64,000 bases of DNA, taken from Octopus sinensis. Lineage: Eukaryota. The DNA is taken from contig NC_043012.1 in NCBI RefSeq assembly GCF_006345805.1, positions 13,826,001 to 13,890,000 on the forward strand, written 5' to 3'. Position 1 is the stretch's first letter. The number at the start of each line of letters is the position of its first letter. Made by a program: the position numbers and the translations under genes. A model generated the notes under the pieces. That model worked only from the letters and a program-made list of their open reading frames with translations. It had not been told where the DNA came from and searched no databases. Below, piece after piece: positions 1 to 44,500 of this stretch.

Positions 1-870
1 AGACTGTCTTACAGCGATAACACATAATTACTGTCAAAGAATCATTGAATATGTCGCGGCTCTAGAGCATGGTTGCGCATCACTAACCTCGGCCTATCCT
101 GTCCTGCAATCAGCGGGTATGGAGAACAAATGTAGAGCCTGGCCGGTGTAATGCGTCCCTTCAATCTACGGAAGCCAGGAGCAGTCCTCCCTCTCCAGTT
201 AGATGAGTACCGAGACGAGACACAAGGATCAGACGGCAATACATGGCAGGGATGATGCAAACTATCACCATCTGCGACCGATGTTTTCGGGATAGCTTTC
301 TCTCGACCCACTTCTATATGAAGTTGACCACCCTATTCGCCATATCTTCACACTCCTTCTTTAAGTGTATAGAACTGAACCAAACCAGACACAGAACAAT
401 TTAACCGATCCAGCCCTTACAAGGCTATTAAACAGCGGGGACCATCTTATATAGGCACCGGGATAGGAGTATTCTGAAATCACTAATTTTCGTTCATGTT
501 TCCGTATTACGTTGCCAGAAAGTCGCACCGATCACCTCGATATGTTTCGTGCCCGACACTATAACAAAAATATTATCTGCCGACGCCGACACAGATTGAT
601 ATTCCGCATTGTACATCGCACCGTATGTTCCCTTTCCCCAAACGCCTTCAGATTCAGCATTAATGTCTCGAGAATCAAAACATACGCTATGGAGGAGATT
701 GTAAAGCCTTGCCAGCCCGAACGCATAAAGATGAAGGGTAACTGTTGATGGCTAATTACCCTGACCAGCGAAGAGATATGTTTAAACAATGCAGCGATCC
801 AATCTCTGAAACCAAGGCCAAAACGGCCTATATATGAGACAACTATCAAGTACCGATGTCAAAAGTTTTC
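1..870 (-). mobile_element. Decayed Tx1/L1-clade non-LTR retrotransposon, reverse transcriptase and thumb region
   Basis: Frameshifted minus-strand translation gives FRDWIAALFKHISSLVRV...SGWQGFTISSIAYVLILETL (RT domains 3-4), SVSASADNIFVIVS (degenerate YADD), GSVKLFCVWFG and KWVERKLSRKHRSQM..IIPAMYCRL. This is the typical Tx1 RT order, with stops and frameshifts. Confidence 0.75.
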
Positions 871-7157: not shown

Positions 7158-8360
7158 TTACTCCAGTGGTGTAAATAACAAAGTGGTAAATAATATTGAA
7201 AATATAATCGATATAACAATACCAATTTTCAAGAATATGGCATCCAGTCTTACGTAGTCGGAGATACAATTTCTCTTTTTCTTACTTTGAAGTTCCTCTG
7301 CAATTAGTGATTCGGATTTTACCATGGAAATCATTGAAATATCTGCAACGTTCTTACTTTGAGATTTGTTTTTGTTGAGGTCTGTCGAAACCGATTTCTT
7401 TTCCCTAGATGACCGATTAATATACAACTTGCTTATAACCACCGATCCAAGCGTGACGATACCACTTAACATTGACAATAACATTAAATACAACATGAGA
7501 AGTGAAGGATATCTTGAATTTTTTGGTGTATTCTTATCGATTTCGACAAGATACAAAACGTTTGATAAAAATATGGTCGTGGCTAGAGAAACTTTCTCTC
7601 CTGATTCAGGCGGAAGAACAAATACGAAAATGGTTAAAATAGTCATCATTACAGTCGGAATCAGCATAGCTATGATTCCTATCGTAGGTTTTCGTCGGAG
7701 ATACATCACCGCAGCTGCCTGACTACCCTCATCATTTTCTGCAGATACCACTCCAAACATGTTGACATCCCACTTGTAGTTTTCTGTAACATTTAGATTT
7801 TTGTAATACATTGTTTGTATTCTCGTTTGACGAATAGAATGCACAGCAACGCACATATGTATTTCGCATCTATGCTCATCAAATGGATACGTATAAGCGT
7901 TCACTTGGCAATAGGTCTCTACGTACTTAAGAGACCACATCTCGACAGTTCCATCATGATAAATCTTGACTTCTTGATCGGTATTGGCATCATCTGGTTC
8001 ATTCACTGAATTACACATTATAAGAGATGGGGTCCATATTTCATGTCTTGGCAGATTTATTTCTGTAATGTTGTTATAGTCCGATGGTTTCCAGATTAGA
8101 TATGCGTCGATCCAATATGGCGCAATCATATACCGAGCCATGAGTATGTTATTTACGAAGTCCAAATCATAGAGTGTGTGAAGATCCAAATCAGTATATA
8201 TATCGACAGAAGTGATCAAATTAATAACAGGTCTTATATCTTTTCTGTAATTCAACAGCAGGTTGTCTTTCAATCGTATTTCATCCTCGTGCGTCGGAAG
8301 AGATTTTACTGTTAATATAATCGAAGTCAAACTGAAAACAAAATATGTTATGAACATCAT
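7158..8360 (-). CDS. Divergent Cys-loop ligand-gated cation channel subunit, cephalopod chemotactile receptor (CR)-type; single coding exon, 400 aa from first ATG
   Basis: Signal peptide, Cys-loop C-x13-C (CQVNAYTYPFDEHRC), M1-M4, and the cation-type M1-M2 linker PESGEK with M2 9' Leu. No loop-C vicinal Cys and no loop-B Trp. The ORF is uninterrupted; the track's 8366 start is a TTG and the first ATG is at 8360. Confidence 0.93.
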   Translation of the reverse strand: MMFITYFVFSLTSIILTVKSLPTHEDEIRLKDNLLLNYRKDIRPVINLITSVDIYTDLDLHTLYDLDFVNNILMARYMIAPYWIDAYLIWKPSDYNNITEINLPRHEIWTPSLIMCNSVNEPDDANTDQEVKIYHDGTVEMWSLKYVETYCQVNAYTYPFDEHRCEIHMCVAVHSIRQTRIQTMYYKNLNVTENYKWDVNMFGVVSAENDEGSQAAAVMYLRRKPTIGIIAMLIPTVMMTILTIFVFVLPPESGEKVSLATTIFLSNVLYLVEIDKNTPKNSRYPSLLMLYLMLLSMLSGIVTLGSVVISKLYINRSSREKKSVSTDLNKNKSQSKNVADISMISMVKSESLIAEELQSKKKRNCISDYVRLDAIFLKIGIVISIIFSILFTTLLFTPLE

Positions 8361-8366
8361 TATCAA

Positions 8367-8960
8367 TTATATTTCAAGAAGGATTAAATATTAGTTTATC
8401 TCAACACTTGTGATAAGTGTTTCTGGTAAATATCGATATGTTTTAGTATTGTAATGTTTATATTAAATTTTGCGTAAATGAGCGTTATTCACTTTGTTAT
8501 TGATACAAGGTAATATAGGGGAAGTTCTCTAGATAACGATAGAGCTGAAGCATGCAACAGTAGCATAAAGCCAACTTTAAATGCAGTATACAAACAACGA
8601 ATTATCGTAAAATGCTCAGTATTTCTTTTCGAAAAGTATTTTTGCAATGTATGATACCTATATGAAAATGTTCTGGTCAATGTATTCCTTTAAATTATAA
8701 GTTGTATGTGTGAAAATAATTTACCATATGAAAAGTGAAAGTTGTTTAATTATTTCAATTTATATATTTCCTCCAATGTTGTTATATAAGTGGTTATTTT
8801 GTATTTCATCCTTTTTAGATACAAGTACAAATATGTATTTCAGGTATAATAATTCCAGTCTCAAAACTGAAAAACCATCAGACTGTCTTCTTTGATATAA
8901 ATGAAGAAATGTTTTCATGCCATAAATATACGGGATATCTCGGCGATTCAGCAACCTGAA
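8367..8960 (-). promoter_or_regulatory. 5' flank conserved with paralogue; candidate 5'UTR exon(s) and splice acceptors
   Basis: Collinear blocks shared with 20637-21200, e.g. aacaacgaattatcgtaaaatgc 8593-8615 versus aacaacgaggtatcgtacaatgc 20840-20862. Homologous minus-strand tttYtttcAG at 8956-8957 and 21194-21195, and tatttacYAG at 8423-8424 and 20673-20674. Confidence 0.5.
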
Positions 8961-9057
8961 AGAAACAAGTTCTAGAAGATATTATATGTATGGATATTTT
9001 TTTAAAACCCTATCATGACAATAACGTTTCAACAATGCAAACAAGGATAATAATCCG

Positions 9058-9320
9058 TTCTACTATAGGCACAAAGCCTGGATTTTGTGGGGAGGGGGAC
9101 AGTCAATAACATCGCCCTAGTCGTCAAATTATCGATCCCGATAGGATGAAAGGCAGAGACGACCTCGGCGGAATTTGAACTCAGAATGTAGCAGGGTACG
9201 AAATACCTATTTCTTTACTGTCCACAAGTGGCTAAACATAGAGGGGACAAACAAGGACAGACAAACGGATCAAGTCGATTATATCGACCCCAGTGCGTAA
9301 CTGGTACTTATTTAATCGAT
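9058..9320 (-). mobile_element. Octopus tRNA-derived SINE family B, dimeric (two subfamily tails)
   Basis: B-box gagttcaaattcc on the minus strand, body gtcgatataatcgact, and the junction gaaatacc|tatttcttta. Other copies at 39820-39985, 41680-41838, 42198-42387 and 43040-43192. Confidence 0.8.
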
Positions 9321-9963
9321 AACTTGTCTTTAAAATCCTCGAAAACCTGTAGTTGAGTAGAATTCAATAACATTGTTTCATTGTTTTCTATTTCCGTGAA
9401 AGGAAAAATAGTTTCTGTACAAGGTGGAATAAATCAGTTGTAGAAATTAGTCAAACCGAGCAAATTCTCGTAACTTTGTTAAAGAAGCGGGTGGAATATC
9501 TCGAATAGCATCAATTTTATCCTGCAATGGATGTATTCCATCTTTTTTCATTACATGTCTCAGAAAATTGATAGAAGAAACTACAGAAATACTTTCGTTT
9601 ACATTAAATATTACAACGTATTGTGACAGGCTAGTAAAAAGCTATTCTAAACGAAGGACATGGATTCTAGTGTGTTTTTCCAGCTTTTGCTGTTTCTTCT
9701 CTTTCTTCATATTTGTTAGGTACTATGACTTCTTTTTTTTTTGTATTTGCCAGCTTCTTTAAAGACTGAAAACAGTATTTTGTTTTGTTCGTTTTTTGTG
9801 GCTATGTTTATTAGTCTTCCTTGATTCTGTTGTAGTTGTTGCTGTAATCCTATGGTGATGGTTTTCAATTAGGTTTCTAGCTGTATAGGGCTTCTACCTC
9901 CTTCGATACGTTGTATGTATAATTTTGTTTTTATGTCAGAGTTTGTGGGGTGTGTCTCACATT

Positions 9964-10331
9964 ATGTGATACGCTCAGTGACACACTCAGACATGCACAC
10001 ACAAGGTGACAGAGGTAAACACATACACACACACACATGCACGAACACACAAGCACATGATTATGTATGTTTATACAAAAGTATAACATACATATACGCA
10101 TACATGCATGCACACACTTACATGCATACATACATACATATATGTGTATGCATACACACATACACACATTGACGCACGCACATGCACACAAACAAATAAA
10201 AAGAACGCAGCTTGGATAATGAACAGAGTGAACGATTAATGAAAAGCTTGGAAGATGCAACGAAAATTTTAGAAAAATAATCAAATGAGTGCATACTTTA
10301 TCGGTTTGACTCTCCCCTGACACAACAAAAC

Positions 10332-10422
<91 letters not shown>

Positions 10423-10541
10423 TAGATATATAGATATAGATATATAGATATATATGCATATATATGCATATATATATACATACATACATATATATATATA
10501 CATACATATATATACATATATATATATATTATATCTATATA

Positions 10542-10586
<45 letters not shown>

Positions 10587-10671
10587 ATGTAGGGTATATA
10601 TAATATATGTATGTATGATATATATTATGCATATATATGCATATATATCTATATATCTATATCTATATCTA

Positions 10672-10714
<43 letters not shown>

Positions 10715-11084
10715 GTTTTGTTGTGTCAGGGGAGAGTCAAACCGATAAAGTATGCACTCACTTGATTATTTTTCTAAAATTTTCGTTGCATCTTCCAAGC
10801 TTTTCATTAATCGTTCACTCTGTTCATTATCCAAGCTGCGTTCTTTTTATTTGTTTGTGTGCATGTGCGTGCGTCAATGTGTGTATGTGTGTATGCATAC
10901 ACATATATGTATGTATGTATGCATGTAAGTGTGTGCATGCATGTATGCGTATATGTATGTATGTTATACTTTTGTATAAACATACATAATCATGTGCTTG
11001 TGTGTTCGTGCATGTGTGTGTGTATGTGTTTACCTCTGTCACCTTGTGTGTGCATGTCTGAGTGTGTCACTGAGCGTATCACAT
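9964..11084. repeat. Inverted duplication, arms about 500 bp, (TA)n-rich spacer about 10480-10620
   Basis: 9964 atgtgatacgctcagtgac... is the reverse complement of ...gtcactgagcgtatcacat ending at 11084. At least one substitution separates the arms (tcaaatgagt vs tcaagtgagt). Confidence 0.9.
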
Positions 11085-11252
11085 ATATATATATACACAC
11101 ATTTGTAGATATATATAAAATCATCCGCTTCCGATCATTCCTTCTCCGTCCGTTTTATTTTCCCCTATCTCATCTCTCCCAATTTTCCTTCTCAATCCTT
11201 TCTGTCTCCGACGTTCCTTATATATATATATATATATTATATATATATATAT

Positions 11253-11302
<50 letters not shown>

Positions 11303-11531
11303 AAACGTCGGAGACAGAAGGATTGAGAAGGAAAATTGGGGATAGGGGAAAATAACGGAGAAGGAAATGATCGGAAATGATCCTTATATATATATATATA
11401 TAATATATATTATATAAGGAAACGTCGGAGACAGAAAGGATTGAGAAGGAAAATTGGGGAGATAGGGGAAAATAAAACGGAGAAGGAAATGATCGGAAGC
11501 GGATGATTTTATATATATCTACAAATGTGTG

Positions 11532-11545
<14 letters not shown>
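11081..11545. repeat. Three copies (one inverted, two direct) of a 90-130 bp purine-rich unit separated by (TA)n
   Basis: ggaaacgtcggagacagaaaggattgagaagg occurs at about 11300 and 11418, and its reverse complement ends at about 11220. The copies differ by scattered indels. Confidence 0.85.
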
Positions 11546-11572
<27 letters not shown>

Positions 11573-11575
11573 CGA

Positions 11576-11806
11576 CAGAGTTGGCCAAAAGTCACCCGAT
11601 AGAAAATCAAAATTCCATAAATACTATTTGTATTTTGTGTATTGACTCTAATGGAAAAATGTCTCTCTCAAGGACTTCAGTTCGAACGCTTTTTCTGATG
11701 TTACATATTTATAGGTTTTTATTAAATTCTTTCAGTTGTTAAACATAAATAAATATTGGAATAAAATGGCTTTGATTTACTGTCTGGTGACTTTAGGCCA
11801 ACCCTG
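11576..11806. mobile_element. Tc1/mariner-type MITE, about 231 bp
   Basis: 21-bp TIRs cagagttggccaaaagtcacc (11576) and ggtgactttaggccaaccctg (11786-11806), with 2 mismatches. TA follows the right end. Confidence 0.75.
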
Positions 11807-11989
11807 TATATATATATATATACATACATATATACATTTGTATTTATGTTAAAAGTCATATTAAAATACAGATATACAATACATGAAATTATATATTATG
11901 TAAGAAATGTTTTGTTTATGTAATCGAAAATATTTTTAACTTCCTGCGAATGTGTTCTGGCTGTCTCTGATCGTCACGTCGTGGTGGCT

Positions 11990-12520
11990 GATCTATGTCT
12001 GTAATAATTCTGTCAACTCTGCTGTACCTCTAGGTTCCACTCTATTCTCTTAGTCCTACATATCAAATACATCCAGGTTTTCAATTTGAACAGGGCGTAT
12101 GATACCTCTAATACCGATAATATAGGCAAATGGGAACCATTGACGCCAGTGACGTGACATCTCCAAGTATCATTATAAGTCTACGGTTTCAGGACGTTGT
12201 ACCAGATGTCATTTTGGAGATGAACGAAGATGCATATGTCTATGGGAAGTACTTTAGAATGGAGATAATATGGGCGATGAGAGGAAGAGATATAATTATG
12301 TATGAAGTGCCACAGAATATGTAAGATAAGACTTGCCAACACCGAATCGCTAAAATCATTATGGAAACGGCAGATAGGAAAGATATTGGATATAGTTTAG
12401 GTATATCTTAGTAGCGTTCTCTACTAATATCATTACCGGTAACATACTGAGCACACCGCCCATGTATAAAATTATGTTAGAACAACACTCTTCGCACATC
12501 ATCGTTAGTCTATAAATAAG
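11990..12520 (-). pseudogene. Possible highly decayed class A GPCR-like relic
   Basis: Frameshifted hydrophobic segments CSNIILYMGGVLSMLPVMILVE, then ERY (12419-12411) with a Trp exactly 26 codons after the Arg (ILAIRCW), then further hydrophobic stretches. Many stops. Confidence 0.22.
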
Positions 12521-13022
12521 ATATTTACCTAATTTCTTCGGTATATTGTAGATGTTGAACCCTTATTTTTTGCATAATAATTTCAAAGCAAAATTAAGAG
12601 AATTAAAGAAAATACTGCAGACAATATGTTGTGTCATTACTATAAAAAATTTAAACGACAGCAAAGAAAGAAATTTAAGAAAAAAAGCAAGTCATGAAAT
12701 TCTGATACTGACCATATATTGAAATCAAAGTGAATTCAGATTTTTCTGTGCACTGTAGACACACAATAGCTACACAGAGTGATATTCTTAAAAAACTGGA
12801 AGGTTATATATGAACGTGTGGGTGACGCACACCCCAATATGCTAATGAATATGTATACGTATATATGTGTGTGAGTGTTTGTGTATGTGGACTCGCGCGT
12901 TTGTGTGTGTACTTATATAGATAAAGGGTGTAGGGTATATATATATGTATATATATATATATGTACATGCATACACATATATAAGTGTCATTTATTATAT
13001 ATCATATATATATATATATATT

Positions 13023-13054
<32 letters not shown>

Positions 13055-13488
13055 ATATATATATATTATATATATTATATTTTTGTGTATGTGTTAGTCA
13101 TATGAATATTATATTCAAAGCATGTAATTGAAAGACACCTCTGTGAAGTTGCCAACATGCAATAAATTGAACACAAACAATAGCGTAAGTAAAAGTTGAT
13201 ATAGTCAGCTTCTTTTCATTTTCAAAGTCAGTTCCGCCTATATTGACTGAAAAATATGTTGTGCGTATGTGTGTGTTTGTTTGTATGTATGCGTATGTGT
13301 GTGCATGTGCGTGTGTATGTGTGCGTGTGTGCATGGTTGAGATTGTGGTTGCGTGGTAAGGAACTTGCTTTCGGCTTCAGCCCCGCTGCGTGGCATTCTG
13401 TACAAATGTCTTCTGCGATACCCACGTTCCGAGCAGGGTCTTGTGAGTGGATTTGGTAGACTGAAACTGACAGAAGATCCTCGTATAG

Positions 13489-13572
<84 letters not shown>

Positions 13573-14629
13573 GAAATTGAAACCGATAGAATAAATAAGA
13601 TGTCTTGGATTTTATTTGTTCGACTAAGACTATTCTAGGCGGTGCTGCAGCATGGCAGCTCTCAAATCACTGAATGAAGGAAAATAAGAACATATATATA
13701 TATACATATATATATATAGATATATATATATATATATTATATATATATTATATATATATATATATATATCTATTATATATATATATATACATACACGTTT
13801 ATATATTTGTTGTGCAAGATTTTTTATGTGAAGTCGTGTGGTGAAACTTGAAACATATTGTTGTATTTAGGAATGGTCATTTTGCCAGTTTAGCCAATAA
13901 AACACACGCACTATATATTTGGTGTTACTTTACTTCAGTGTTATTTATTTTTTACATTAATCTTAATCTTATTTCGGCCAGAGTTCTTTCGTCACGCTCC
14001 TGTGACCGCATCAGTGGTCCTTTGTTTTCTTCTTTCTTATTTGTGTCTCTCCTTACTAACCGTCAGCCATTTTGTATTTCCATTGTATGTCTTCATTTGC
14101 GCATGCTTATATCTCTATGTGCGTCATAGATGTCTTGGATTTTATTTATTCGACTAAGACTCTTCTCGGCGGTGCTGCAGCATGGCAGCTCTCAAATCAC
14201 TGAATGAAGGAAAATAAGAATATATATATATATATATACATATATAAACACACAAACACGCACACACGCAGACACACACACTCACAACATACATATATGT
14301 ATATATATGGGATCGCGTGGCGTCTACTCTGGGATAGACTGGTGTTCAGTTAAGTGGGAATGTGGGGCTGCTCGCCTCGCCAAGTAACTGACATTATTCA
14401 AAGGATATGTGTTCATCGACATATAACAAGATTATCGTAATATGTGAAGCTGGTGCCTGAATGTTTCTAGCTTCAAGCTATCACGAAAGGTTAGAATTGT
14501 TACATTTACGGTGGTAGTAGTGTAACTATTCAGGTAAAAATATGCAAAAGAAGATCATCATGGTATACTAAAACCGCTTTGATTTTAGAAGAGTCAACGC
14601 ATGGAGATAGTTCTTACAATGAATTTTGG

Positions 14630-14945
14630 TAAAAATCGATGCACAGGGAGTCATGAAGTTCCGCTTTTTGCAAGACAAACGAGCGGCGGAAACCTATGGA
14701 GATAGGAAAGAAGCCTTACTCCACATTGAAAATCAAGGTGTCAAGGTTTCGGGCTGATCATTTTGAGATCTTAGATCTCAAAGTAACCAGTCGGCGACCA
14801 CAAAAGACAAACAACGAGTTGTTCACGACACGATACTCGAGGACCGAGTATCATGACCGAGTAGTTGATAATCTGCGGATTTCCCGCCATAGAGTTGGTC
14901 ACATCATCCACATTCTGGACATGAGAAAGCATTCCGCAAAATGCA
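14630..14945 (+). mobile_element. Mariner transposase N-terminal (HTH) relic
   Basis: KIDAQGVMKFRFLQDK..PYSTLKIKVSRFR...VVHDTILEDR...ISRHRVGHIIHILDMRKHSAK resembles mariner KIEYRAVIKF..PSYSTVKKW..F...ISKERVGHILHEEL.MRKLSAR. Confidence 0.75.
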
Positions 14946-16374
14946 GAAGAGAAGTGCATCAAAATGACGGCATTAAATGTGTTTTGCGACCGGTTTGCTG
15001 CGGTAGAGCCTCATTTTATGGCTCCTTTAGTCGCTATGCATAAATCTTGGCTTGATTATTCTGTTCCACAAACAAAGCAGCAATAATGTACTTTAATAAT
15101 CACCAAATCTATAATCATTCATTGTGTAAATACATTTTTGAGAGGGACTTCCTCTATAAAACTCGGAGTATAATCGTATCACAGTCAGGTTCCACTTAGG
15201 AAATTATATCAACAGCAGCAGCATTTGCTTCCTTTCTCTAATCATGCACTTCCTCCTCCACCTCCACCGTCTCCATCGCTCCTCATGCTCTTTCTTCTAC
15301 ACCCTCTTCTCCTCCTCCTCCTCCTCATCATCATCATCACCATCACTAACACAATTCCTCAGCATCTGCATCTTTGTCTTTGTCGTCATCATCGTGGCTG
15401 TTGGCGTCAATCGTAATTTTGATTTACATACAGATATTTAATAAGACATAGAAACAGCAATTTTTGAAATCAGTCTTTATTCGATAAAGTAATTTTATTA
15501 TGGAAAACACGGACAAGTGATTAAGCTTTATTCCAAATTGTGTATAAATATCTAGATTTCATGGTGCTACAGAATCACAACATTTTACAATAGTTTGTGT
15601 TATAATAATATACATGTATTTGACTTCATATATAAAAATAATACTCGCTGTATACAGTATAATGAGAGACATTTAAATATGTGAATAGTGTGAACGATTA
15701 TTGCTTTCTGACATTGCAGAACTGCTCTTCATTGTTTCTGATCCCTATTTAAGAGGGAGTTGGTTTTATTCATAGTCATACAGTCCCATTACTCATTTAA
15801 ATATTAAAATTGTTACGTACGATGATAAAATTTCTTCTTTCATAAATGTATTTTACTTGGTGAACATAGCGCTGATACATCGATATTCCAGTGTTTCTAG
15901 TCATTGGATCAGTGGTTTGTTATCTAACAGGTTTATTTATTTTAGATAACGTCCTAAGTTTCATGCAATAATCTTTGATAAATACACTTACTAGAAAATG
16001 ACCTCACACGCATTAAAATTCGTAAACCTTTAGTTTCAGAACTGATGTTTGCATTGTTACAATGTTACACATTAATCTCAACATGAAGTATTGTGCTTAT
16101 TCTCTATTCAGTAAAGGAATTCTGTACATGTTATCCGGTAACTGTTAATGCTCTAGCCGCTCCGCAAATATTAGGAAAGCAATTGATAATATGAGTTAAA
16201 GGCTTATAAGTATATTTGTGTTAAAGAACTATTTATCATTACAGTACAGCTATAGAATGAGGCTCTATTAGGAGATCTTTCACGGACATAAAAAGAAAAA
16301 AAATAGAACCCTATGTAAACTAGTAAATGTTTTACCATAAATAAATATGAAAATTATTTAGTATAAAGAAGAGG

Positions 16375-17021
16375 CGGCTCGGCAGGGGTGAAACCATGGT
16401 AGGTGAGATGAAGCGCGTCGCTAAAAAAGTGTTGATGTGATTTGACGAGATCCTCACCGTGGATTCGGTTAGGCAGAACGGCAGGCTTCATGCATGTAAT
16501 GTAGGAGACTAGCACGAAGGTAGCAGGTGTCATTTACGGCGTCAGAAACCACCTTCAGTCATGGTATTGGCTGAAATTGCATCTGATGGGTCCAAGTCAC
16601 TCTTGATCTCCATTGATGCTGATGTCAAGAACTCCAGCCCAAGCATCCAATTTGATACAGAGGTACTGCGAAGAACATTTCAACGGGATTTTAGAGACAA
16701 GACACTAAGGCCTCCCTCTATCCCATGAACTTTGCTATTTGGTATTTCTGCTCGCTCCTATTCAAATGTATCAGATCTGAAGAAAGCCCTTCTGCCTTCA
16801 TGAGTCAATGTGGATGAAGTGGTTATGCGGCGCTCATGCAACTCAAGGACCACTAATTTGAAGGCTATGATCAATACGAAAGGTTATCATTTTGAGATGC
16901 AATTACTGCAATTAATTGACCATTTAACATAGAACGTGTGTGCTGAATTTCATTACCCTACATTAAGTGTATTTTGAATAATTAAGAAATATCAATGGGT
17001 AAATCTTTCTGGGACACCCTG
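16375..17021 (+). mobile_element. Tc1/mariner (maT/DD37D-like) transposase relic with right TIR
   Basis: FDEILTVDSVRQNGRLHA...RRQKPPSVMVLAEIASDGSKS..., LYPMNFAIW, SDLKKAL...LKAMINTKGYHFE. The element ends in gggacaccctg followed by TA at 17021-17023. Confidence 0.8.
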
Positions 17022-17440
17022 TAGATACAGAAAATATCAGTCAAATTAATATAACCGAAATTGCATGATAACACAACGTTATGAAGGCAAAGCAAAATTG
17101 CTTAAATACAAAGTGAACTAAAAATAATATCTCTAGTAGACGAACGCATACAAAAACAACATAAAATATTCTGTAAAAAGCTAGTTTGGTATTCTTCTAG
17201 TGACGTCAGTGGATAACGAAAGACAACAATATAATCATATGACGTGTACGTTGCTAGAAACGTAAGGGTTTCTACGTAGCGACAATTAGATGTCTATATA
17301 TTTAATATGCTAAAGAGTTTTAGAAAGATTTCCAGTATTTATTTGAAGGTGAGAGACATATATCTAAAGTTGTGAATGGCGCATCATATCAGAAAATATT
17401 CCTTGATTCAGTGTTTTATCATATATATATATATATTATA

Positions 17441-17498
<58 letters not shown>

Positions 17499-17579
17499 TT
17501 ACTTAGTATTAACATAATCAATTTTTGTTGTTTTTGGTCCTCAAAATTATAAAAAACTGTAGACTTATAATTATTATTA

Positions 17580-17611
<32 letters not shown>

Positions 17612-17631
17612 TATTATTATTATTATTATTA

Positions 17632-18179
17632 TTGAGTGAGCGAGCAGAGCATGCCATCAAAGTGACACTGGGGTAAATATTACGAAGCCCAGTATACCCA
17701 TCATGACTACCCGTCTGATAAGGGTACACCAGGCACATGCATCACAACCATATGTGCGCGACATGGTGATCTCATATCAAGATAAACAGCACATGACCTT
17801 GCAGGTGGGGCCAGTTAGATTTTCTTCAGATCGAGTAACCCATCAAAAGGTCCCTGAATAAGGGTTGTTTTTTAAGGATGTTGAACGAAACACCCGTTTC
17901 AGAGGTGAATTATTCAAACCCCAAAGAATCCCTCTCAACACATGGCTATGATGCTCCTCCACTACTTCTGCTCGTGATCAAGATGCACATATCGTCAGCC
18001 ACTAAGGGACATGCTCAACTGGTTAAAGTCAAACAACTGACAAGCAAATCTGTGGTATTGAGGCAGAATATTTGCTGTAGGCCATCTTTTATACCAAGAC
18101 AAAACGTTGTACATGATAACACTTCCAATCAGTTAAGATCAGAAGCCATGAGAGCCACTGCCTGGTACTGCATCAGGGC

Positions 18180-18180
<1 letters not shown>
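17632..18180. mobile_element. Non-coding interspersed repeat embedded in (ATT)n arrays, probably the 3'UTR of a TAA-targeting non-LTR element
   Basis: About 550 bp of higher-GC sequence bounded on both sides by long (ATT)n. Resembles a common octopus repeat from memory; no ORF with homology. Confidence 0.45.
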
Positions 18181-18258
<78 letters not shown>

Positions 18259-18266
18259 CATTATTA

Positions 18267-18309
<43 letters not shown>

Positions 18310-18391
18310 CATTATTATCATCATCATCATCACGTCATCATCATCATCATCATCATCATCGTCATCATCGTCATCATCATCATCATCATCT
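18181..18391. repeat. (ATT)n grading into (ATC)n trinucleotide array
   Basis: Directly visible. Confidence 0.95.
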
Positions 18392-18897
18392 GAAACCATA
18401 GCCATATGGTTGGAAAGCAATATTCTTACCACACAGTCATGCCCATACACACACACATACACACACACACACACAACACACATATGTATATATATATATG
18501 TACCGAAGAGATTATGTAAAATGTCATTCGGTGTAAAACTAAACTCAAAAGACGTTAAAACACTCTTATTTTCTGTCACTTATTTCGTTACAATATTAAC
18601 TATGTTTCAATGCTCACTTTCATATACCGAATATGAATTTGTTACCTGATTGTATACTTCGACGCATCCTCATATGCTTGCATTTCATATAATATCACGT
18701 AACCTTAGATATATAATTCATAAATGTCGCTGTTTACAGTTGAATCTTTTACGGCATTAATTTTACGAAATTAATTGCTGACCAAATTACAATTATGAAA
18801 GTTTGATAATCTCATGCTTGAAATTAAAATCCAGCTTTATTTGCAAAAACAATAACTCCCTTCATTGCTAATTTGTTCCAATACACTGGAGCATAAA

Positions 18898-19509
18898 AAT
18901 GGCACATGTAATTATTTAATATCAATTAGATATCTCTATTAGCGATCGGTACTAATTTTAAGAAGTACAAGGCAAATTCTATAAATATTTCGATAACACT
19001 GAAACTCCGTCGTGATCATAGAATGTCCAAGGAAATATATAGGATATATGAAAAATAACAAGATAAAAATTATTTGTAAATTAACAGACACGGCATAAAT
19101 ATTGTTGGTCTTGTTAGTCAAGCGGTGTAAATAACAAACCTAAAAACAATATTGAAATTATAACCAATAATACGATGGAAATTGCACATGTAATTATTTA
19201 ATGGCACATGGCACAAATTATTTAATGGCACATGTAATTATTTAATATCAATTAGATATCTCTATTAGCGATCGGTACTAATTTTAAGAAGTACAAGGCA
19301 AATTCTATAAATATTTCGATAACACTGAAACTCCGTCGTGATCATAGAATGTCCAAGGAAATATATAGGATATATGAAAAATAACAAGATAAAAATTATT
19401 TGTAAATTAACAGACACGGCATAAATATTGTTGGTCTTGTTAGTCAAGCGGTGTAAATAACAAACCTAAAAACAATATTGAAATTATAACCAATAATACG
19501 ATGGAAATT
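18898..19509. repeat. Tandem duplication (period 326 bp) of the last codons and 3' flank of the second CR gene
   Basis: 18898-19183 equals 19224-19509; the identical ORF-track entries 18939..19121 and 19265..19447 confirm the offset. The 40-bp junction 19184-19223 is built from pieces of atggcacatgtaattattt. Confidence 0.9.
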
Positions 19510-20618
19510 TTTAGAAATATGTCATCCAGTCTTACGTGATCGGAAATACAGTTTCTCTTTATCTTACTTTGAAGTTCATTATCATTAAGAGTTTGCGATT
19601 TTACCGTGGAAATTAATGAAGCATCTGCCACTTTGTTATTTTGAGTTTTGTTTTTATTTTCTTGAGATGATTGATTAACATGCAACTTGCTTATAACCAC
19701 CGATCCAAGCGTGACGATACCACTTAACATTGACAATAACATTAAATATAGTATGAACAGTGAAGGATATTTCGAATTTTTTGGTGTATTCTTATCGATT
19801 TGAACAAGATACAAGACGTTTGATAAAAATATTGTCATTGCTAGAGAAACTTTCTCTCCTGATTCAGGAGGCAGAAGAAAAACAAAAAGAGTTAAAATAG
19901 TCATCATTACTGTTGGAATCAACATAGCTACTATTCCTATCGTGATTTTACGTCGTAACTGCACTGCCACAAATGCTTGACTGATGCCATCGTTTGTGAC
20001 ACTTGCTTTACCATAGAAATGAATATCCCACTTGTAGTTTTCTAAATCATTCATACTCGAGTAATATACATAATTTAATCGTGTTTCGTCGGGAACATGT
20101 AAAGCAACACAAATGTCTATTTTACATTCATGGTCATCAAATGGATACGTGTATGCGTTCACTAGGCAATATGTCTCCATGTACTTAAGGGACCACAACT
20201 CAACTGTTCCGTTAGAGTGAACGATTACTTCGCGATTGATATCGCTATTATCTTCCTCATTCACTGAATTACACATCATCAGAGATGGCGTCCATATTTT
20301 ATTTTTTGGTATATACATATGACTAATGTTGTTATATTCCAATGGATCCCAGGTCAGATATTCATCAGTCCAACTTGGGATGAACAAATACCGAGCAATC
20401 AGTAAGTTATTTACGAAGTCCAAGTCATACAGCGTGTGAAGCATCAAGGAAGCATCTATCTCAACAGGTGTAGACAGATTAGTAACAGGTCTTATATCTT
20501 TTGTATAATTCAAAAGCAATGTTTTTTTCAATCGTTCTTCATCCTCGTGCGTTGGGTTGGAATTTACTATCAATATCATTAAACTCAAGCTAAAAGTCAA
20601 ATATTTCATGAGCTTCAT
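19440..20618 (-). CDS. Second divergent Cys-loop channel subunit, chemotactile receptor (CR)-type; single coding exon, 392 aa from first ATG
   Basis: Signal peptide, Cys-loop CLVNAYTYPFDDHEC, PESGEK, M1-M4, no vicinal Cys or loop-B Trp. Paralogous to 7158-8360. The track's 20636 start is a TTG; ATGs are at 20618 and 20609. Confidence 0.93.
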   Translation of the reverse strand: MKLMKYLTFSLSLMILIVNSNPTHEDEERLKKTLLLNYTKDIRPVTNLSTPVEIDASLMLHTLYDLDFVNNLLIARYLFIPSWTDEYLTWDPLEYNNISHMYIPKNKIWTPSLMMCNSVNEEDNSDINREVIVHSNGTVELWSLKYMETYCLVNAYTYPFDDHECKIDICVALHVPDETRLNYVYYSSMNDLENYKWDIHFYGKASVTNDGISQAFVAVQLRRKITIGIVAMLIPTVMMTILTLFVFLLPPESGEKVSLAMTIFLSNVLYLVQIDKNTPKNSKYPSLFILYLMLLSMLSGIVTLGSVVISKLHVNQSSQENKNKTQNNKVADASLISTVKSQTLNDNELQSKIKRNCISDHVRLDDIFLKISIVLLVIISILFLGLLFTPLD

Positions 20619-21629
20619 TTTCTTTAATATCTTCAAGAGTTAAATATTGGTATATACTTGTGTTAACGGTTCCTAGTAAATATTGACTTGTATCAATTTT
20701 GTAACCGTTTTTCTACACTAAATAACTGTTGTACATGTTATTATTGATACAACAAAATAAGATATATAGAGTTTTCGAGAACACGACAGATTTATAGAAT
20801 GCATCAAATACACAAATCTCACTTTATAGGCACTATATAAACAACGAGGTATCGTACAATGCAGTGTATTTATTTTTAAATGAGTTGTGAAATGTAGAAT
20901 ACTGCATGAAGATGTTATATTTTTTCTGGTTAAATTGATTATTAAAATAAGATGTAAATAAGAATATTAATGTTCCACTTGAAGAGACAGGGATATTTAA
21001 TCATTTAATTATATATATTTCAACCAATGTTCTGATAGAAATATTTATGTAAGTCAGCTTTTATACTTATAAGGCTGCGAATTCGAATATATATCGGGTG
21101 TTATAACCCCGTTCACATAGCAATATCACATGGAAAAATTGAAGAGATTATTTGGTGCCAAACATGTTCGTGGTAACGAGGTGACTCGGCAATCTGAAAT
21201 AAATAAAAGTAGGTAGATAAACATGCAAATCAATGCTTGAAAATCCATTATCATTTACTAACGTTTCAGCTACATAAACAAGGCAACAAAGGTACTTACA
21301 GCAAGATATGCAAAGGAATAACAGCTTAAATTTCGTTGAACGTTTTCATGCCATTGAAAAAAAATTATCATCTTCAAGTACCTATTTTTTTTTACATTGA
21401 TTACCGTGTGAAACACAATCTTTTTAACACTTGTTTTAGATTAACGTTTGCTCTTGATTCTGTATCCAAAATGACCTTAGGTTTTCTGTATAACATTAAC
21501 CTTTCGAGGATTCCTTTGCTTTGCTTGAAAACCCATAAATATACGGCATCTAACAATAACATTTTGCTTAATTGTAATGTTTGTGCAAATTTATTCTTTC
21601 CATAGTAACTATATTGTTACAGTAATATA

Positions 21630-27490: not shown

Positions 27491-27723
27491 TATTTCTTTA
27501 TTGCCCACAAAGGGCTAAACATAGAGGGGACAAACAAGGACAGACTTAGCTATTAAGTCGATTATATCGACCTCAGTGCACAACTGGTACTTAATTTATC
27601 GACCCCGAAAGGATGAAAGGCAAAGTCGACTTCGGCGGAATTTGAACTCAGAACGTAACGTCAGACGAAATACCGCTAAGCATTTCGCCCGGCGTGCTAA
27701 CGTTTCTGCCAACTCGCCGCTTA
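27491..27723 (-). mobile_element. Full-length SINE family B copy with 7-bp target-site duplication TAATACC
   Basis: A-box tggcagaaacg and B-box gagttcaaattcc on the minus strand. taatacc at 27484-27490 and 27724-27730. Confidence 0.85.
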
Positions 27724-28594
27724 TAATACCACCTCGTATATTGTTACCCTACTCACCCTCACTTATGTATAAGTAAACATAAATTTTATTCAAGCTAAAT
27801 TCATGAACATTCTTTGTCGGCTCATTTAAGTAAAATATACGTTTCTTATAAGTGTATGCATAATATACTTCTACAATAAATTTGGAATTGTAAACATGGG
27901 AACTTTCAGGAAATATAAAACTCCTCCATATTCTTAAACAAATGATCATCTAGATACATGTATGCAAAATCTGTATCACCATTATATACACGTGTGAGTG
28001 TTCGTGCGTTTGGACGTGTGTGTGTGTGCGTGTGTGTGTATGTGTGTGCGGGCGTGTGTTTATGTACGTATGCGCGCGTGTTCTTATAAATACGTGCTTA
28101 CGTATATAATTCAGATCCTATTTTGTATGTTTTACTGACTTAATCAATACCCATGATGATAATTCGCTATAGCGTATATTGAGAAACAACTTAGGAAATA
28201 TTATCAATGTTAGATAAATAGGAATTACTATGCAGGTTGGTAGCTGGATGAAATGGAATTATGAGAAAGTTATGAACCATATCGTTTTATCTGTAATCCA
28301 AAGCAAACACAACCGTATATTCATCTTCTATATTTTTGTCTAAATATGTTCTCTTACATAAATCTAGTCTTACTCAAGGGAAGACGCGTTATAGATGAAA
28401 AATAAATCATGAAAAAGAAAAGAAGAAGAAAATAAAGAATTAATTTAGGAAAAGGAAAGAAAAAGGATGGAAATGTTTTTTTGAAAATTTTCAAGAGATT
28501 GTAAAATAGCAGATTGAAAAATAACAAAGTGATATTGTGCTCATGTAATTATATATGCAAAGACTGAAATATTAGCCATGGTTCTATGTCCAGT

Positions 28595-41578: not shown

Positions 41579-44500
41579 GTGTGTGTGTGTGTATTTGTGT
41601 TTGTGTGTGTGTTTCTATGTATAAAGGAATGCATGCAGATAGGTGTGTTTTTTGTAGAGTAATTCGAAATATTTAGGGAGGGGGCCAGTCGATCAGATCG
41701 ACCCCAGTACGCAACTGATACTTAATTTATCGACCCTGAAATGATGAAAACAGAGTTGACCTTAGCAGAATTTGAACTGACACTGTAAAGGCAGACGAAA
41801 TGCCGCTAAGCATTTCGCCCGGCGTGCTAACGTTTGCGGTCGATAGGTATTAATATTTTTTTTAGATTTTAATTATTTCTGTGTTAAAACAAGTACTTTC
41901 ACACCTAAAAATTGATAAATTAATAAATATAAATAGAATAGAGTACCGCACTAATATTAATTAAAATATATTAATGGGAAATTTGTAGTTTACCATAGAT
42001 GAGTAAACAAAGAATAGCACATACTGTGTAGAAAACGAAACTCTGGAGGCGAGTGTGTGGTATTGTTTTGCATTTATGATAATATAAATATATACAGTAG
42101 AGTACTGTTTCTACTTCGAGGATTTTCACCAATCTCAGGAGATTTTGGAACATAGCATCCCGTGGTAATCGAGGGATTGTTGTATATACGTATATTATTT
42201 TCTACTCTAGGCACAAGGCCCGAAATGTTGGGAAGGGGGGCAGTCGATTAGTACGTAATTTATCGACCCCGAAAGGATGAAAGGCAAAGTCGACTTCGGC
42301 GGAATTTGAACTCAGAACTTAAGGACAGAGGAAATGCCGCTAAGCATTTAGCCCGGCGGGATAACGTTTCTGCCAGCTCCCCGCCTATAAAATATATACG
42401 TATATTCTGAAAGCAATTTGATCAAGTGTCTTCAGCTTATAATTTACAGAGGAGTTATTTGTTTTTATTTCAAGTATATAATTTTTTTCTATCTTTACAA
42501 GGATGTTAATTCACATTTATGTGAAGGCACGTGGCTTATTCATTAAGATATTCGGCTCACGATCACAAGATCATGAGTTCGATTCCGGGTGGTGGGTTGT
42601 ATCTTTACTTTCACGTTATTTCTCTCCACTGAGCTGCTGTCATATTCCGTGTCACGCTAAATCTCTTTGAGGACTAGGTTAAGTGTATGCGTATCTGTGG
42701 AATAGCCAGACACTATACGTTAATTTCATGAACAAGCTTTTCCCTTGATCGGAGTGTCTATATTTCACTGTTCTACATTTCAGTTTTGTTAACGAACCGT
42801 CTTGTCGATGAATATTAAACGAGGATGCTACCCTGATACACCCTTTCTTAATGATATCACTTTGTTGATATCACCCCTGTTGTACTCTTTCGCCCCAACT
42901 TTCTCTCACTCTTTCTTCCTGTTTAAGTAACGCTGCGATGGACTGGCGTCCCGTCCAGCTGGGGGGGGGGATACATACGCCACAGAAACCTGGAAACCGG
43001 GCCCATGAGACTGGTTAGGCTTGAAAAGGGCGAAAGAAGAATATTTGTAAGTATCTTCATGTGGTACTTATTTTATCGAACTCGAAAAGTTGAAAGTGGA
43101 CCTCGGCTGAATTTGAGCTCAGAACATGGTGACGGACGAAATGCCGTTAAGCGCTTCGCCTGGCGTGCTAACGATTCTCCCAGATGGCCGCGTTAGTGAA
43201 TCAAATTATTACAAGTAAATTGCATAATAGTAAGCGTGTTATCTGAATATTTTGAATGACCGTATGTAGGAAGTACTTTCGTTCGTCGCGTTTCGTCTAC
43301 TTGGTGGTATGCTTTATGTATAAAGTATATCTGCGTCACTCAAGGCTGGAAAACAGTTGAAAATATCCAAACACTGTGTTCTGTTATACATAATATTGAT
43401 TTCAAATGTGCCCTCTCTATATCTTTACAAGAATTAAACCTACAACATCGGTATGACGCATCGGCTCACCCATAGTCCGTGTACATATCTTTGCTCGTCT
43501 GCAATACGCTCATTACATTCCAACGGAGTAGAAATTTGTAAATTTATTATCCTGAATATATTTAAATATTAGTCTATAATATGGTAAAATTATTACGTCT
43601 TCTTATATAAAACCAATGTCTATCTGTTGATAATTCGAAGACAAAAGATATAAAAAGAGAAAGACATCAAGTCGAAGTCATAATAAGGTTTGAAATATTC
43701 GTAGAATTCCTGTATATTTCAAACTTCTCTTTAAATCAAAAATATTATCTTGTAATTATATTTCTGCAGAAAAAAAAATTTTTTTTCTGTGTCGAAACAA
43801 CTCATAAAAATGCCTGCAATATTTTTTAATATGTATTGTCTTCAACCATTTCTGTAACAATTTGTCTCAAGAGAAATCTAGTTGAATTATGGTAGGAAGT
43901 AATTCAATTTTTACGAAAAAAAATATCTTTTCTTCAGGCAGCAAATATTAAATGTTAGATATACGCTACCATCGAGTACAGAAAACAATTATATTTTAGT
44001 ACAGCTATATTGCTTATATTTTGTTTCGGTGTCGTGACTGCATTCCAGTTTATTTGTTTATCATTCACTCTTTTACACTCTTTTACACCTCAACACAACA
44101 TAAGCTACTGATTTTGTGTTTCCTGTAAAAAAAAAAAAAAACTTTGCTTAATCTGTATTATCAGTTCCAGATCATAATGGGTGCAGGTAATATTTGAGTT
44201 GCTGGATATGCGCAGATAAAACCGTAGCAGCTTTGTAGAAGAATCCCAGAAAGTATACGTATGTTGATCTTACATATTTCGAGAAATATTAGCAGTTCAG
44301 CCAGTGAATACGTTACATGAGACATTTCATGTAATTAGAAATTTATTGAAAATTCTCTCGAAGCAATTAAATTGAAACCGATTTTCTATATTATTATTCG
44401 TGGAGCTATTTGATATTTTAATTAATTACGTGGATTATTATTCTGAGCAAGATTAACTGGGATATACTAGGATGGCTTTACAGTATTTCTATTAAATATT

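What the first reader, a model, noticed from the sequence alone, without database searches (positions are those of the whole stretch)
7158..20618. Tandem pair of intronless, non-cholinergic Cys-loop receptors (cephalopod chemotactile 'taste-by-touch' receptor cluster)
Seen: two same-strand genes about 11 kb apart, each with an uninterrupted ~1.2-kb CDS, signal peptide, Cys-loop, GEK cation filter and four TM helices. Established: canonical nAChR genes are multi-exon, and octopus carries an expanded, tandemly arrayed set of ACh-insensitive nAChR-like subunits expressed in suckers that act as chemotactile receptors. Inference: these are two members of that array, derived from a retroposed ancestor. 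The family is known, but the ligands of these particular paralogues may not be.
Basis: partly seen in the sequence, partly recalled or inferred. Interest (0 to 1): 0.8.

Follow-up and report, generated by a model that had tools for sequence, protein, structure and literature searches.

The report
Two octopus chemotactile receptor genes

Summary
Two uninterrupted minus-strand ORFs, CRa (7158-8360, 400 aa) and CRb (19440-20618, 392 aa), lie 11,079 bp apart. Each has a signal peptide, a C-x13-C Cys-loop, a GEK ring and four TM helices. Their best solved relative is Octopus bimaculoides chemotactile receptor CRT1 (E 1e-149, full length; AF2 model TM 0.95, rmsd 1.7 A). Canonical nAChR and 5-HT3 chains score only 1e-34 or weaker.

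The acetylcholine-binding residues are gone: Y93 is Cys, W149 is Ala, Y198 is Gly or Ile, and loop C is 7 residues shorter and lacks Y190, C192 and C193. Both genes fall inside the octopus CR clade. The region is colinear with the O. bimaculoides CR array on CM046615.1. The window's left end overlaps an O. vulgaris CR locus at 98.6% identity.

CRa is under purifying selection (dN/dS 0.30). CRb is a mosaic: its first ~825 nt are 96-98% identical to a neighbouring paralogue, which indicates gene conversion. Residues lining the CRT1 ligand pocket differ at 4-6 of 7 positions, so ligand tuning probably differs.

Intronless structure, tandem arrays and a retroposed origin are already published for this family. 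These are new members of a known kind, of modest interest.

The parts
7158..8360 (-). CRa: single-exon CDS of a chemotactile receptor (400 aa + stop). It is the ortholog of the O. bimaculoides gene behind protein P0001.
   Evidence: ORF. Pfam LBD + TM. CRT1 E 1e-149. 89% aa identity to P0001, with colinear flanks. dN/dS 0.30.
8301..8360 (-). CRa signal peptide (MMFITYFVFSLTSIILTVKS)
   Evidence: Hydrophobic N-terminus. It ends where mature CRT1 numbering begins (offset 20).
7866..7910 (-). CRa Cys-loop, CQVNAYTYPFDEHRC
   Evidence: Aligns with Torpedo alpha1 C128-C142.
7593..7601 (-). CRa GEK ring (-1' Glu) at the cytoplasmic mouth of M2
7176..7682 (-). CRa transmembrane domain M1-M4, with a short (about 35-residue) disordered M3-M4 loop
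   Evidence: AF2 helices 227-248, 254-277, 287-324 and 359-395; pLDDT below 50 at residues 325-366. Hydropathy.
19440..20618 (-). CRb: single-exon CDS of a second chemotactile receptor (392 aa + stop). It is the positional ortholog of O. bimaculoides P0005.
   Evidence: ORF. Pfam. 66% identical to CRa. Flanks colinear with L002.
20559..20618 (-). CRb signal peptide (MKLMKYLTFSLSLMILIVNS)
   Evidence: The N-terminus matches annotated O. vulgaris P0003 at 19 of 20 residues.
20124..20168 (-). CRb Cys-loop, CLVNAYTYPFDDHEC
19851..19859 (-). CRb GEK ring
19458..19940 (-). CRb transmembrane domain M1-M4
19794..20618 (-). Approximate tract of CRb (CDS nt 1 to about 825: signal peptide, ECD, M1-M2) shared at 96-98% identity with the paralogue P0003. 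This is the inferred gene-conversion tract.
   Evidence: Sliding-window identity. pS 0.044 in codons 1-275 against 0.40 in codons 276-end.
8361..19439 (.). 11,079-bp intergenic spacer made of microsatellites and dispersed repeats; no further CR

Best explanation
CRa and CRb are two functional members of the cephalopod chemotactile receptor (CR) family. CRs are nAChR-derived subunits of pentameric cation channels that no longer bind acetylcholine.

By homology with CRT1, each subunit is secreted into the membrane through a 20-residue signal peptide. Five subunits assemble, as homomers or as heteromers with other CRs. The channel is opened by poorly soluble contact chemicals that bind the remodelled orthosteric pocket at the extracellular subunit interface. 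Cations then pass a pore with a -1' Glu (GEK) ring and a 9' Leu gate, depolarising sucker chemosensory cells.

The genes belong to a tandem array that arose by DNA-level duplication of an ancestral intronless (retroposed) copy. Within the array, the extracellular halves of non-adjacent paralogues are being exchanged by gene conversion and then diverge by amino-acid change.

Shown here: gene structure, domain architecture, loss of ACh-site residues, clade membership, synteny, purifying selection on the pore, and the mosaic history of CRb. Inferred from the family: the ligand class, ACh insensitivity, sucker expression and pentamer composition.
For: - Closest relatives: CRT1 is the best PDB sequence hit for CRa (E 1e-149, residues 1-399), then squid CRB1 (7e-44), then 5-HT3A and nAChR (1e-34 and weaker). 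The AF2 model of CRa (pLDDT 76.7) best matches 8eis CRT1, with target-normalised TM-score 0.95, rmsd 1.7 A and E 9e-42.
- ACh site: the alignment was anchored on Torpedo alpha1, whose numbering checked out. Y93 is Cys, W149 is Ala, Y198 is Gly (CRa) or Ile (CRb). Loop C is 7 residues shorter and lacks Y190, C192 and C193. The same changes occur in CRT1.
- Pore: the PPESGEKVSLA ring and 9' Leu are kept.
- Tree: in the NJ tree CRa pairs with O. bimaculoides P0001 (bootstrap 100). CRa and CRb sit in an 8-member subclade (93.5) inside the octopus CR clade that contains CRT1. Torpedo, Capitella and Bulinus are distant.
- Synteny: window 30970 to 2169 is colinear with O. bimaculoides CM046615.1 37.80-37.85 Mb, in the gene order P0005, P0001, P0004.
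- Selection: CRa against its ortholog has dN/dS 0.30. M1-M3 has omega 0.10-0.17 for both genes.
- Introns: CR genes P0003, P0004, P0005 and P0031 span exactly 3 x aa + 3 nt. The outgroup genes span 14.9 kb and 4.6 kb.
- Mode of duplication: paralogue homology runs about 430 bp upstream of the ATG. The copies therefore arose by DNA duplication, not by separate retroposition events.
- Literature: CRs are intronless, tandemly clustered, not gated by ACh and activated by hydrophobic molecules (PMC11526382; PMC13174522; bioRxiv 10.1101/2025.03.03.641191).
Against: - There are no expression or functional data for these two genes.
- Neither protein is in the 5.8-billion-protein collection, so no one has annotated them in this genome.
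- Of the seven residues reported to line the CRT1 pocket, only W122 (and L153 in CRb) is kept. CRa has Asp and Glu at two pocket positions, so a 'greasy pocket' is not guaranteed.
- The tree is neighbour-joining, has only three non-cephalopod outgroups, and uses sequences picked by similarity to CRa.
Confidence: 0.88

Rival explanations
1. They are ordinary acetylcholine-gated neuronal nAChR subunits, or 5-HT3-like receptors, as the automatic names of their O. bimaculoides orthologs suggest ('acetylcholine receptor subunit alpha-like 2', '5-hydroxytryptamine receptor 3A-like').
For: The Pfam domains and overall fold are shared with nAChR and 5-HT3A.
Against: - The loop-C vicinal Cys pair and Y190 are deleted. 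Y93, W149 and Y198 are replaced.
- CRT1 scores 115 orders of magnitude better than any nAChR or 5-HT3 chain.
- The genes are nested in the CR clade.
- They are intronless, unlike the outgroup genes.
Confidence: 0.02
2. One or both copies are silent or decaying duplicates, that is, intact-looking ORFs that are no longer used. CRb is the likelier candidate.
For: - CRb against its positional ortholog has dN/dS 0.82, and about 1.1 in the ECD.
- Neither protein is annotated in any database searched.
- Tandem chemoreceptor arrays commonly hold pseudogenes (established knowledge).
Against: - Both ORFs are complete, with no stops or frameshifts over 1.2 kb.
- M1-M3 is strongly constrained (omega 0.09-0.17) in every comparison.
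- The high ECD ratio for CRb is explained by the gene-conversion mosaic, which makes P0005 a poor ortholog for that half.
- CRa has omega 0.30, and a 74% identical relative (P0002) from Logan assemblies of unidentified source groups with CRa and P0001.
Confidence: 0.07
3. They are CR-family subunits that work only as modulatory partners in heteromers, or in a tissue or task other than sucker prey or surface sensing (for example mate sensing by the hectocotylus, or internal chemosensation).
For: - CRs form both homo- and heteropentamers (PMC11526382).
- CRs are enriched in hectocotylus tips, and CRT1 also senses progesterone (bioRxiv 10.1101/2025.10.28.685082).
- Pocket residues differ strongly from CRT1.
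Against: Nothing in the sequence argues for or against this. It is a sub-case of the main explanation rather than a contradiction of it.
Confidence: 0.15

Closest known systems
Octopus bimaculoides chemotactile receptor CRT1 (PDB 8EIS, 9E6B-9E6D)
   Same: - Full-length homology: 60% (CRa) and 57% (CRb) identity.
- Same length class (about 400 aa), same fold, same shortened loop C, and the same loss of Y93, W149, Y190, C192 and C193.
- Same extra Cys pair (aa 116 and 170), same PPESGEKVSLA pore mouth, short M3-M4 loop, and an intronless gene.
   Different: The residues lining the CRT1 ligand pocket are Y39, Y58, W122, F124, L153, L191 and F192. In CRa they read D, M, W, L, V, E, G; in CRb they read M, L, W, L, L, G, I. 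CRa has Glu where CRT1 has Gln at M2 17'. The two genes belong to a different subclade of the array.
O. bimaculoides genes for P0001 ('AChR subunit alpha-like 2') and P0005 ('5-HT3A-like') on CM046615.1, and O. vulgaris P0003 on OX597828.1
   Same: - P0001 is the positional and phylogenetic ortholog of CRa: 89% aa identity, dS 0.17.
- P0005 is the positional ortholog of CRb.
- P0003 is the next gene in the same array. It lies about 9.7 kb beyond the window's left end and shares the 5' 825 nt with CRb at 96-98% identity.
   Different: - The window genome is not O. bimaculoides: flanks are 85-90% identical.
- The annotated 459-aa P0001 model carries extra 5' exons, although the intact intronless ORF (MMSITYF...) is present in L001.
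- The CRb-CRa spacer is 11 kb here against about 26 kb in O. bimaculoides.
Squid chemotactile receptor CRB1 (PDB 8EIZ)
   Same: Same family and fold (E 7e-44; Foldseek E 2e-25).
   Different: Only 28% identity over the Foldseek alignment. It belongs to the decapodiform branch, which is tuned to bitter, more soluble compounds (own knowledge of Kang et al. 2023; not re-read here).
Canonical nicotinic acetylcholine receptor subunits (e.g. Torpedo alpha1, human alpha7)
   Same: Cys-loop pentameric channel fold, a GEK cation ring, a 9' Leu, and four TM helices.
   Different: - About 22-27% identity.
- The ACh aromatic box and the vicinal Cys pair are missing.
- Loop C is 7 residues shorter and the cytoplasmic loop is much shorter.
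- Single-exon gene.

Membership tests
Cephalopod chemotactile receptors (CRs) | Cys-loop pentameric ligand-gated channel subunit: N-terminal ligand-binding beta-sandwich with a C-x13-C loop, plus four TM helices | tested here: met
   Pfam PF02931 + PF02932. Cys-loop at aa 151-165. AF2 secondary structure. Foldseek hits to pLGICs.
Cephalopod chemotactile receptors (CRs) | Falls inside the CR clade with characterised CRs (CRT1), apart from canonical nAChRs | tested here: met
   NJ tree with 200 bootstraps. PDB E-values are 1e-149 for CRT1 against 1e-30 for nAChR. Caveat: distance method and few outgroups.
Cephalopod chemotactile receptors (CRs) | Loss of the acetylcholine-binding determinants (aromatic box; loop-C vicinal cysteines) | tested here: met
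   Y93 is Cys, W149 is Ala, Y198 is Gly or Ile, and Y190, C192 and C193 are deleted. The same pattern holds in CRT1.
Cephalopod chemotactile receptors (CRs) | Intronless coding sequence | tested here: met
   Uninterrupted ORFs align with CRT1 residues 1-399. Relatives P0003, P0004, P0005 and P0031 span exactly CDS length.
Cephalopod chemotactile receptors (CRs) | Located in the tandem CR array | tested here: met
   Two same-strand copies lie 11 kb apart. The region is colinear with the P0005-P0001-P0004 array of O. bimaculoides CM046615.1. A third copy lies next to the window in O. vulgaris.
Cephalopod chemotactile receptors (CRs) | Cation-selective pore (-1' Glu ring, 9' Leu gate) | tested here: met
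   PPESGEKVSLATTIFLSN in both genes. Selectivity itself was not measured.
Cephalopod chemotactile receptors (CRs) | Hydrophobic orthosteric pocket that binds poorly soluble ligands | tested here: inconclusive
   W122 is kept and L153 is Val or Leu. Y39, Y58, F124, L191 and F192 are replaced; CRb's replacements are all non-polar. CRa has Asp at 39 and Glu at 191.
Cephalopod chemotactile receptors (CRs) | Not gated by acetylcholine; gated by terpenoids, steroids, bile acids or microbial metabolites | not testable with these tools
   Needs electrophysiology or Ca imaging.
Cephalopod chemotactile receptors (CRs) | Expression in sucker chemosensory epithelium | not testable with these tools
Canonical nAChR alpha subunit | Vicinal Cys192-Cys193 in loop C and the Y93/W149/Y190/Y198 aromatic box | tested here: not met
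Processed retrogene (each copy an independent retroposition) | No homology to paralogues outside the transcribed region; poly(A) remnant and target-site duplications | tested here: not met
   Paralogue homology extends about 430 bp upstream of the ATG and into the 3' flank, so the copies arose by DNA duplication. Poly(A) remnants and target-site duplications were not searched for. A retroposed common ancestor remains compatible, and the literature supports it.

The most novel reading that the evidence does not exclude
Two readings go beyond what is published and are not excluded.

1. The CRa orthogroup (CRa, O. bimaculoides P0001, Logan P0002) keeps an Asp at CRT1 pocket position 39, and CRa also has Glu at 191. 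It may therefore be a CR lineage that has left the 'greasy pocket' rule and senses cationic or polar compounds.
2. The extracellular halves of the two flanking paralogues (CRb/P0005 and P0003/P0004) are repeatedly homogenised by gene conversion that skips the middle gene, and are then re-diversified by amino-acid change. Domain-level shuffling would then be a source of receptor diversity in the array.
Probability: 0.2. Interest if true: 0.5.

Novelty: new member of a known kind. Interest (0 to 1): 0.25.

Why it matters
The result adds two intact, apparently unannotated chemotactile receptor genes to the repertoire of an O. vulgaris-like genome. It pairs them with their O. bimaculoides orthologs, which carry misleading automatic names.

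It also gives concrete predictions. Both receptors should be ACh-insensitive cation channels, and their ligand tuning should differ from the only well-studied receptor, CRT1. The conversion tract in CRb is a natural domain swap that could help map which half of the protein sets ligand specificity.

None of this changes the current picture of the family.

Tried and rejected
- Exact look-up of CRa in the assembly index found nothing, and no identical or near-identical protein appeared in the homology search. The source genome could therefore be placed only indirectly, by the 283/287-nt overlap with O. vulgaris L004.
- A Biopython BLOSUM bootstrap run timed out. It was replaced by a vectorised Kimura-distance NJ tree.
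- Three literature calls failed on term format. The primary papers (van Giesen 2020, Allard 2023, Kang 2023) were not in the searchable library, so secondary sources and two later preprints from the same groups were used.
- Positive selection in the CRb/P0003 extracellular domain (pN/pS 1.93) was tested and is not significant (Fisher p 0.09), so it is not claimed.
- I first read the window as coming from a species closest to O. bimaculoides, because CRa has no close O. vulgaris or O. sinensis protein. I dropped this after the end overlap with the O. vulgaris locus. The orthologs are simply absent from those gene sets.
- The direction of the gene conversion could not be resolved: CRb's tract is nearer P0005 by pS but nearer P0004 by total identity.
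- The tRNA scan found nothing.
- I did not run a second homology search with CRb. Any CRb-like protein would already have been found through its 66% identity to CRa.


Full report
**Observation.** The window carries two long uninterrupted ORFs on the minus strand, at 7158..8366 and 19440..20636.
- With the first in-frame ATG, the coding sequences are CRa 7158-8360 (400 aa) and CRb 19440-20618 (392 aa).
- In-frame stop codons lie just upstream of both ATGs, and the genes are 11,079 bp apart.
- Both proteins match Pfam Neur_chan_LBD (E 1e-31) and Neur_chan_memb. They are 66% identical to each other.
- A tblastn of both proteins against the window finds no further copy, only a 23-residue fragment.
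- An AlphaFold2 model of CRa, built on a 31-sequence alignment, has mean pLDDT 76.7. It shows an N-terminal helix, a beta-sandwich and four long helices at 227-248, 254-277, 287-324 and 359-395. The short M3-M4 loop is disordered.

**Identity.** The best solved relative of CRa is the Octopus bimaculoides chemotactile receptor CRT1.
- 9e6b scores E 1e-149 over residues 1-399 with no gap larger than one residue; 8eis scores 6e-145. Squid CRB1 follows at 7e-44. 5-HT3A and nAChR chains score 1e-34 or weaker.
- By structure, the model's best match is 8eis, with target-normalised TM-score 0.95, rmsd 1.7 A and E 9e-42. All other hits are at about 1e-25.
- In the 5.8-billion-protein collection, every hit down to 29% identity is a cephalopod protein. 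The nearest non-cephalopod hits are nAChR-like proteins of Capitella and Bulinus, at 27-28%.
- A neighbour-joining tree (388 columns, 200 bootstraps) pairs CRa with O. bimaculoides P0001 (bootstrap 100). It puts CRa and CRb in an eight-member subclade (93.5) nested among octopus CRs, including CRT1. Torpedo alpha1, Capitella and Bulinus lie far outside.

**Non-cholinergic character.** I took the Torpedo alpha1 sequence from a PDB alignment. I checked that the transcribed numbering returns Y93, C128, C142, W149, Y190, C192, C193 and Y198, and then aligned it with the CR set.
- In CRa and CRb, Y93 is Cys, W149 is Ala, and Y198 is Gly (CRa) or Ile (CRb).
- Loop C is seven residues shorter and lacks Y190, C192 and C193. 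CRT1 shows the same pattern.
- The pore mouth PPESGEKVSLA (-1' Glu) and the 9' Leu are retained.
- The proteins therefore keep the cation-channel machinery but lack what is needed to bind ACh.

**Ligand pocket.** Two preprints list CRT1 pocket residues in mature numbering: Y39, Y58, W122, F124, L153, L191 and F192. An offset of 20 reproduces the five positions first tested, and the alignment confirms all seven.
- At these positions CRa reads D, M, W, L, V, E, G.
- CRb reads M, L, W, L, L, G, I.
- Ligand tuning is thus very likely different from CRT1. The CRa pocket is also less uniformly hydrophobic. This is an inference from alignment only.

**Gene structure and origin.**
- Each CDS is a single exon, because it aligns end to end with the CRT1 protein.
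- The related genes P0003 (O. vulgaris), P0004 and P0005 (O. bimaculoides) and the distant CR-like P0031 (O. sinensis) each span exactly 3 x aa + 3 nt.
- The Bulinus and Capitella outgroup genes span 14.9 kb and 4.6 kb for proteins of about 380 aa.
- Homology between paralogues runs about 430 bp upstream of the start codon and into the 3' flank. The present copies therefore arose by DNA-level tandem duplication.
- Retroposition can apply only to their common ancestor. This is what the literature already states (PMC11526382 and PMC13174522).

**Genomic context and source.**
- The window is colinear, in reverse orientation, with O. bimaculoides chromosome CM046615.1 at 37.80-37.85 Mb, at 85-90% nucleotide identity. 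The gene order there is P0005, P0001, P0004.
- CRa is the ortholog of P0001: 89% aa identity, dS 0.167. CRb occupies the position of P0005.
- The first 287 nt of the window match the first 287 nt of the O. vulgaris locus L004 (OX597828.1) at 283/287. The alignment stops exactly at both sequence ends.
- The window therefore abuts the P0003 gene of an O. vulgaris-like genome. P0003 is the positional ortholog of P0004 (L004 and L003 are colinear) and should lie about 9.7 kb beyond the left end.
- Neither CRa nor CRb is present in the protein collection or the gene index, so they appear to be unannotated in that lineage.
- In O. bimaculoides the annotated 459-aa P0001 model has extra 5' exons, although the intact intronless ORF is there.

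**Selection and mosaic history.**
- CRa against P0001 gives dN/dS 0.30: 0.10 in M1-M3 and 0.42 in the extracellular domain. This indicates a functional gene.
- CRb against P0005 gives 0.82 overall, but this comparison is confounded.
- A sliding window shows that CRb nt 1 to about 825 are 96-98% identical to O. vulgaris P0003, apart from a dip to 83-91% around nt 450-750. Its flanks and its 3' third follow P0005 at 89-95%, and are only about 70-77% identical to P0003.
- Synonymous divergence between CRb and P0003 is 0.044 in codons 1-275 and 0.40 in codons 276-end.
- The same 5' tract is also unusually similar between P0005 and P0004 within O. bimaculoides: pS 0.125 against 0.293 in the 3' part.
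- The middle gene (CRa/P0001) stays at pS of about 0.4 to all of them.
- The simplest reading is repeated gene conversion of the signal peptide, ECD and M1-M2 between the two flanking paralogues. The direction is unresolved.
- Within the tract, amino-acid changes outnumber silent ones (ECD pN/pS 1.93), but not significantly (p 0.09).

**Mechanism.**
- Shown: the architecture, the pore motifs, the loss of the ACh site, the family placement, the constraint on the pore and the array context.
- Inferred from CRT1 and the family literature: assembly into homo- or heteropentamers, gating by poorly soluble contact chemicals at the subunit interface, cation influx, and expression in sucker chemosensory cells.

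**Rivals.**
- Canonical nAChR or 5-HT3 subunits, as the automatic names suggest, are excluded.
- Silent or decaying duplicates are unlikely, given the intact ORFs and omega of about 0.1 in the pore region.
- A role as heteromer-only subunits, or in another sensory setting such as the hectocotylus, cannot be told from sequence.

**Novelty and verdict.** The family, its loss of ACh binding, its intronless genes, its tandem clusters and its diversifying ligand pocket are all published. What is new here is limited to:
- two unannotated members of an O. vulgaris-like genome and their orthology assignments;
- their pocket residues;
- a clear gene-conversion mosaic.

I rate this a new member of a known kind, with interest 0.25.

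Noticed in passing
window 19794-20618 (CRb CDS nt 1 to about 825): CRb is a mosaic. Its 5' two-thirds are 96-98% identical to the non-adjacent paralogue P0003 (pS 0.044). Its flanks and 3' third follow the positional ortholog P0005 (pS 0.13, against 0.40 to P0003). The same tract is also homogenised between P0005 and P0004 in O. bimaculoides. This points to recurrent gene conversion that skips the middle gene.
   Followed up: yes
window 18898-19183 and 19224-19509: A perfect (100%) 286-bp tandem duplication with period 326 bp. It covers the last 70 nt of the CRb CDS plus 216 nt of 3' flank. O. bimaculoides has a single copy. It is either very recent or an assembly artefact. It explains the 23-aa CR fragment at 19117-19185.
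   Followed up: partly
window 1-287: The left end of the window overlaps the start of O. vulgaris locus L004 (OX597828.1, about 57.40 Mb) at 283/287 identity. A third CR gene (the P0003 ortholog) should therefore lie about 9.7 kb beyond the window. The source genome is O. vulgaris-like but not identical to assembly GCA_951406725.2.
   Followed up: partly
L001 14183-15376 (O. bimaculoides); equivalent to window 8320-8335: The annotated 459-aa O. bimaculoides protein P0001 has about 70 extra N-terminal residues. Its match to the intronless ORF begins just after the TTTTGTTTTCAG motif inside the signal-peptide coding region, which looks like a splice acceptor. The intact intronless ORF starting MMSITYF is present, so the extra exons are probably an annotation artefact or a 5' UTR splice variant.
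   Followed up: partly
CRa and CRb aa 116 and 170 (window 8013-8015 and 7851-7853 in CRa): An extra cysteine pair is conserved in nearly all CR-clade proteins and absent from the outgroups. One Cys replaces Torpedo Y93 (loop A). The other lies five residues after the Cys-loop. It may be a CR-specific disulfide; I did not check this in the structure.
   Followed up: no
window 7548-7550 (CRa M2 17'): CRa and its O. bimaculoides ortholog have Glu at M2 17' (LVEIDK), where CRb and CRT1 have Gln (LVQIDK). This adds a charged ring near the outer pore mouth and could alter conductance or Ca permeability.
   Followed up: no
window 52814-54511 (-): A 565-aa ORF with a reverse-transcriptase domain (RVT_1, E 3e-29), probably a non-LTR retrotransposon. 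It is flanked by a 43-bp tandem repeat (52562-52777) and long TA microsatellites. A 365-bp piece nearby (52741-53103) is 95% identical to a copy in the O. vulgaris locus L004.
   Followed up: partly
window 44794-45413; also 9126-9319, 27518-27725, 41676-42385: A dispersed element of about 184 bp with a tRNA-like core (GGCGGAATTTGAACTCAGAAC). It occurs as a 3.4-copy tandem array and as single copies, one of them about 800 bp upstream of CRa. It is also present in the O. bimaculoides loci. ARAGORN calls no tRNA.
   Followed up: partly
window 20637-64000: There is no CR-like sequence in the 43 kb upstream of CRb. This is either a large gap in the array or its edge in this genome.
   Followed up: partly
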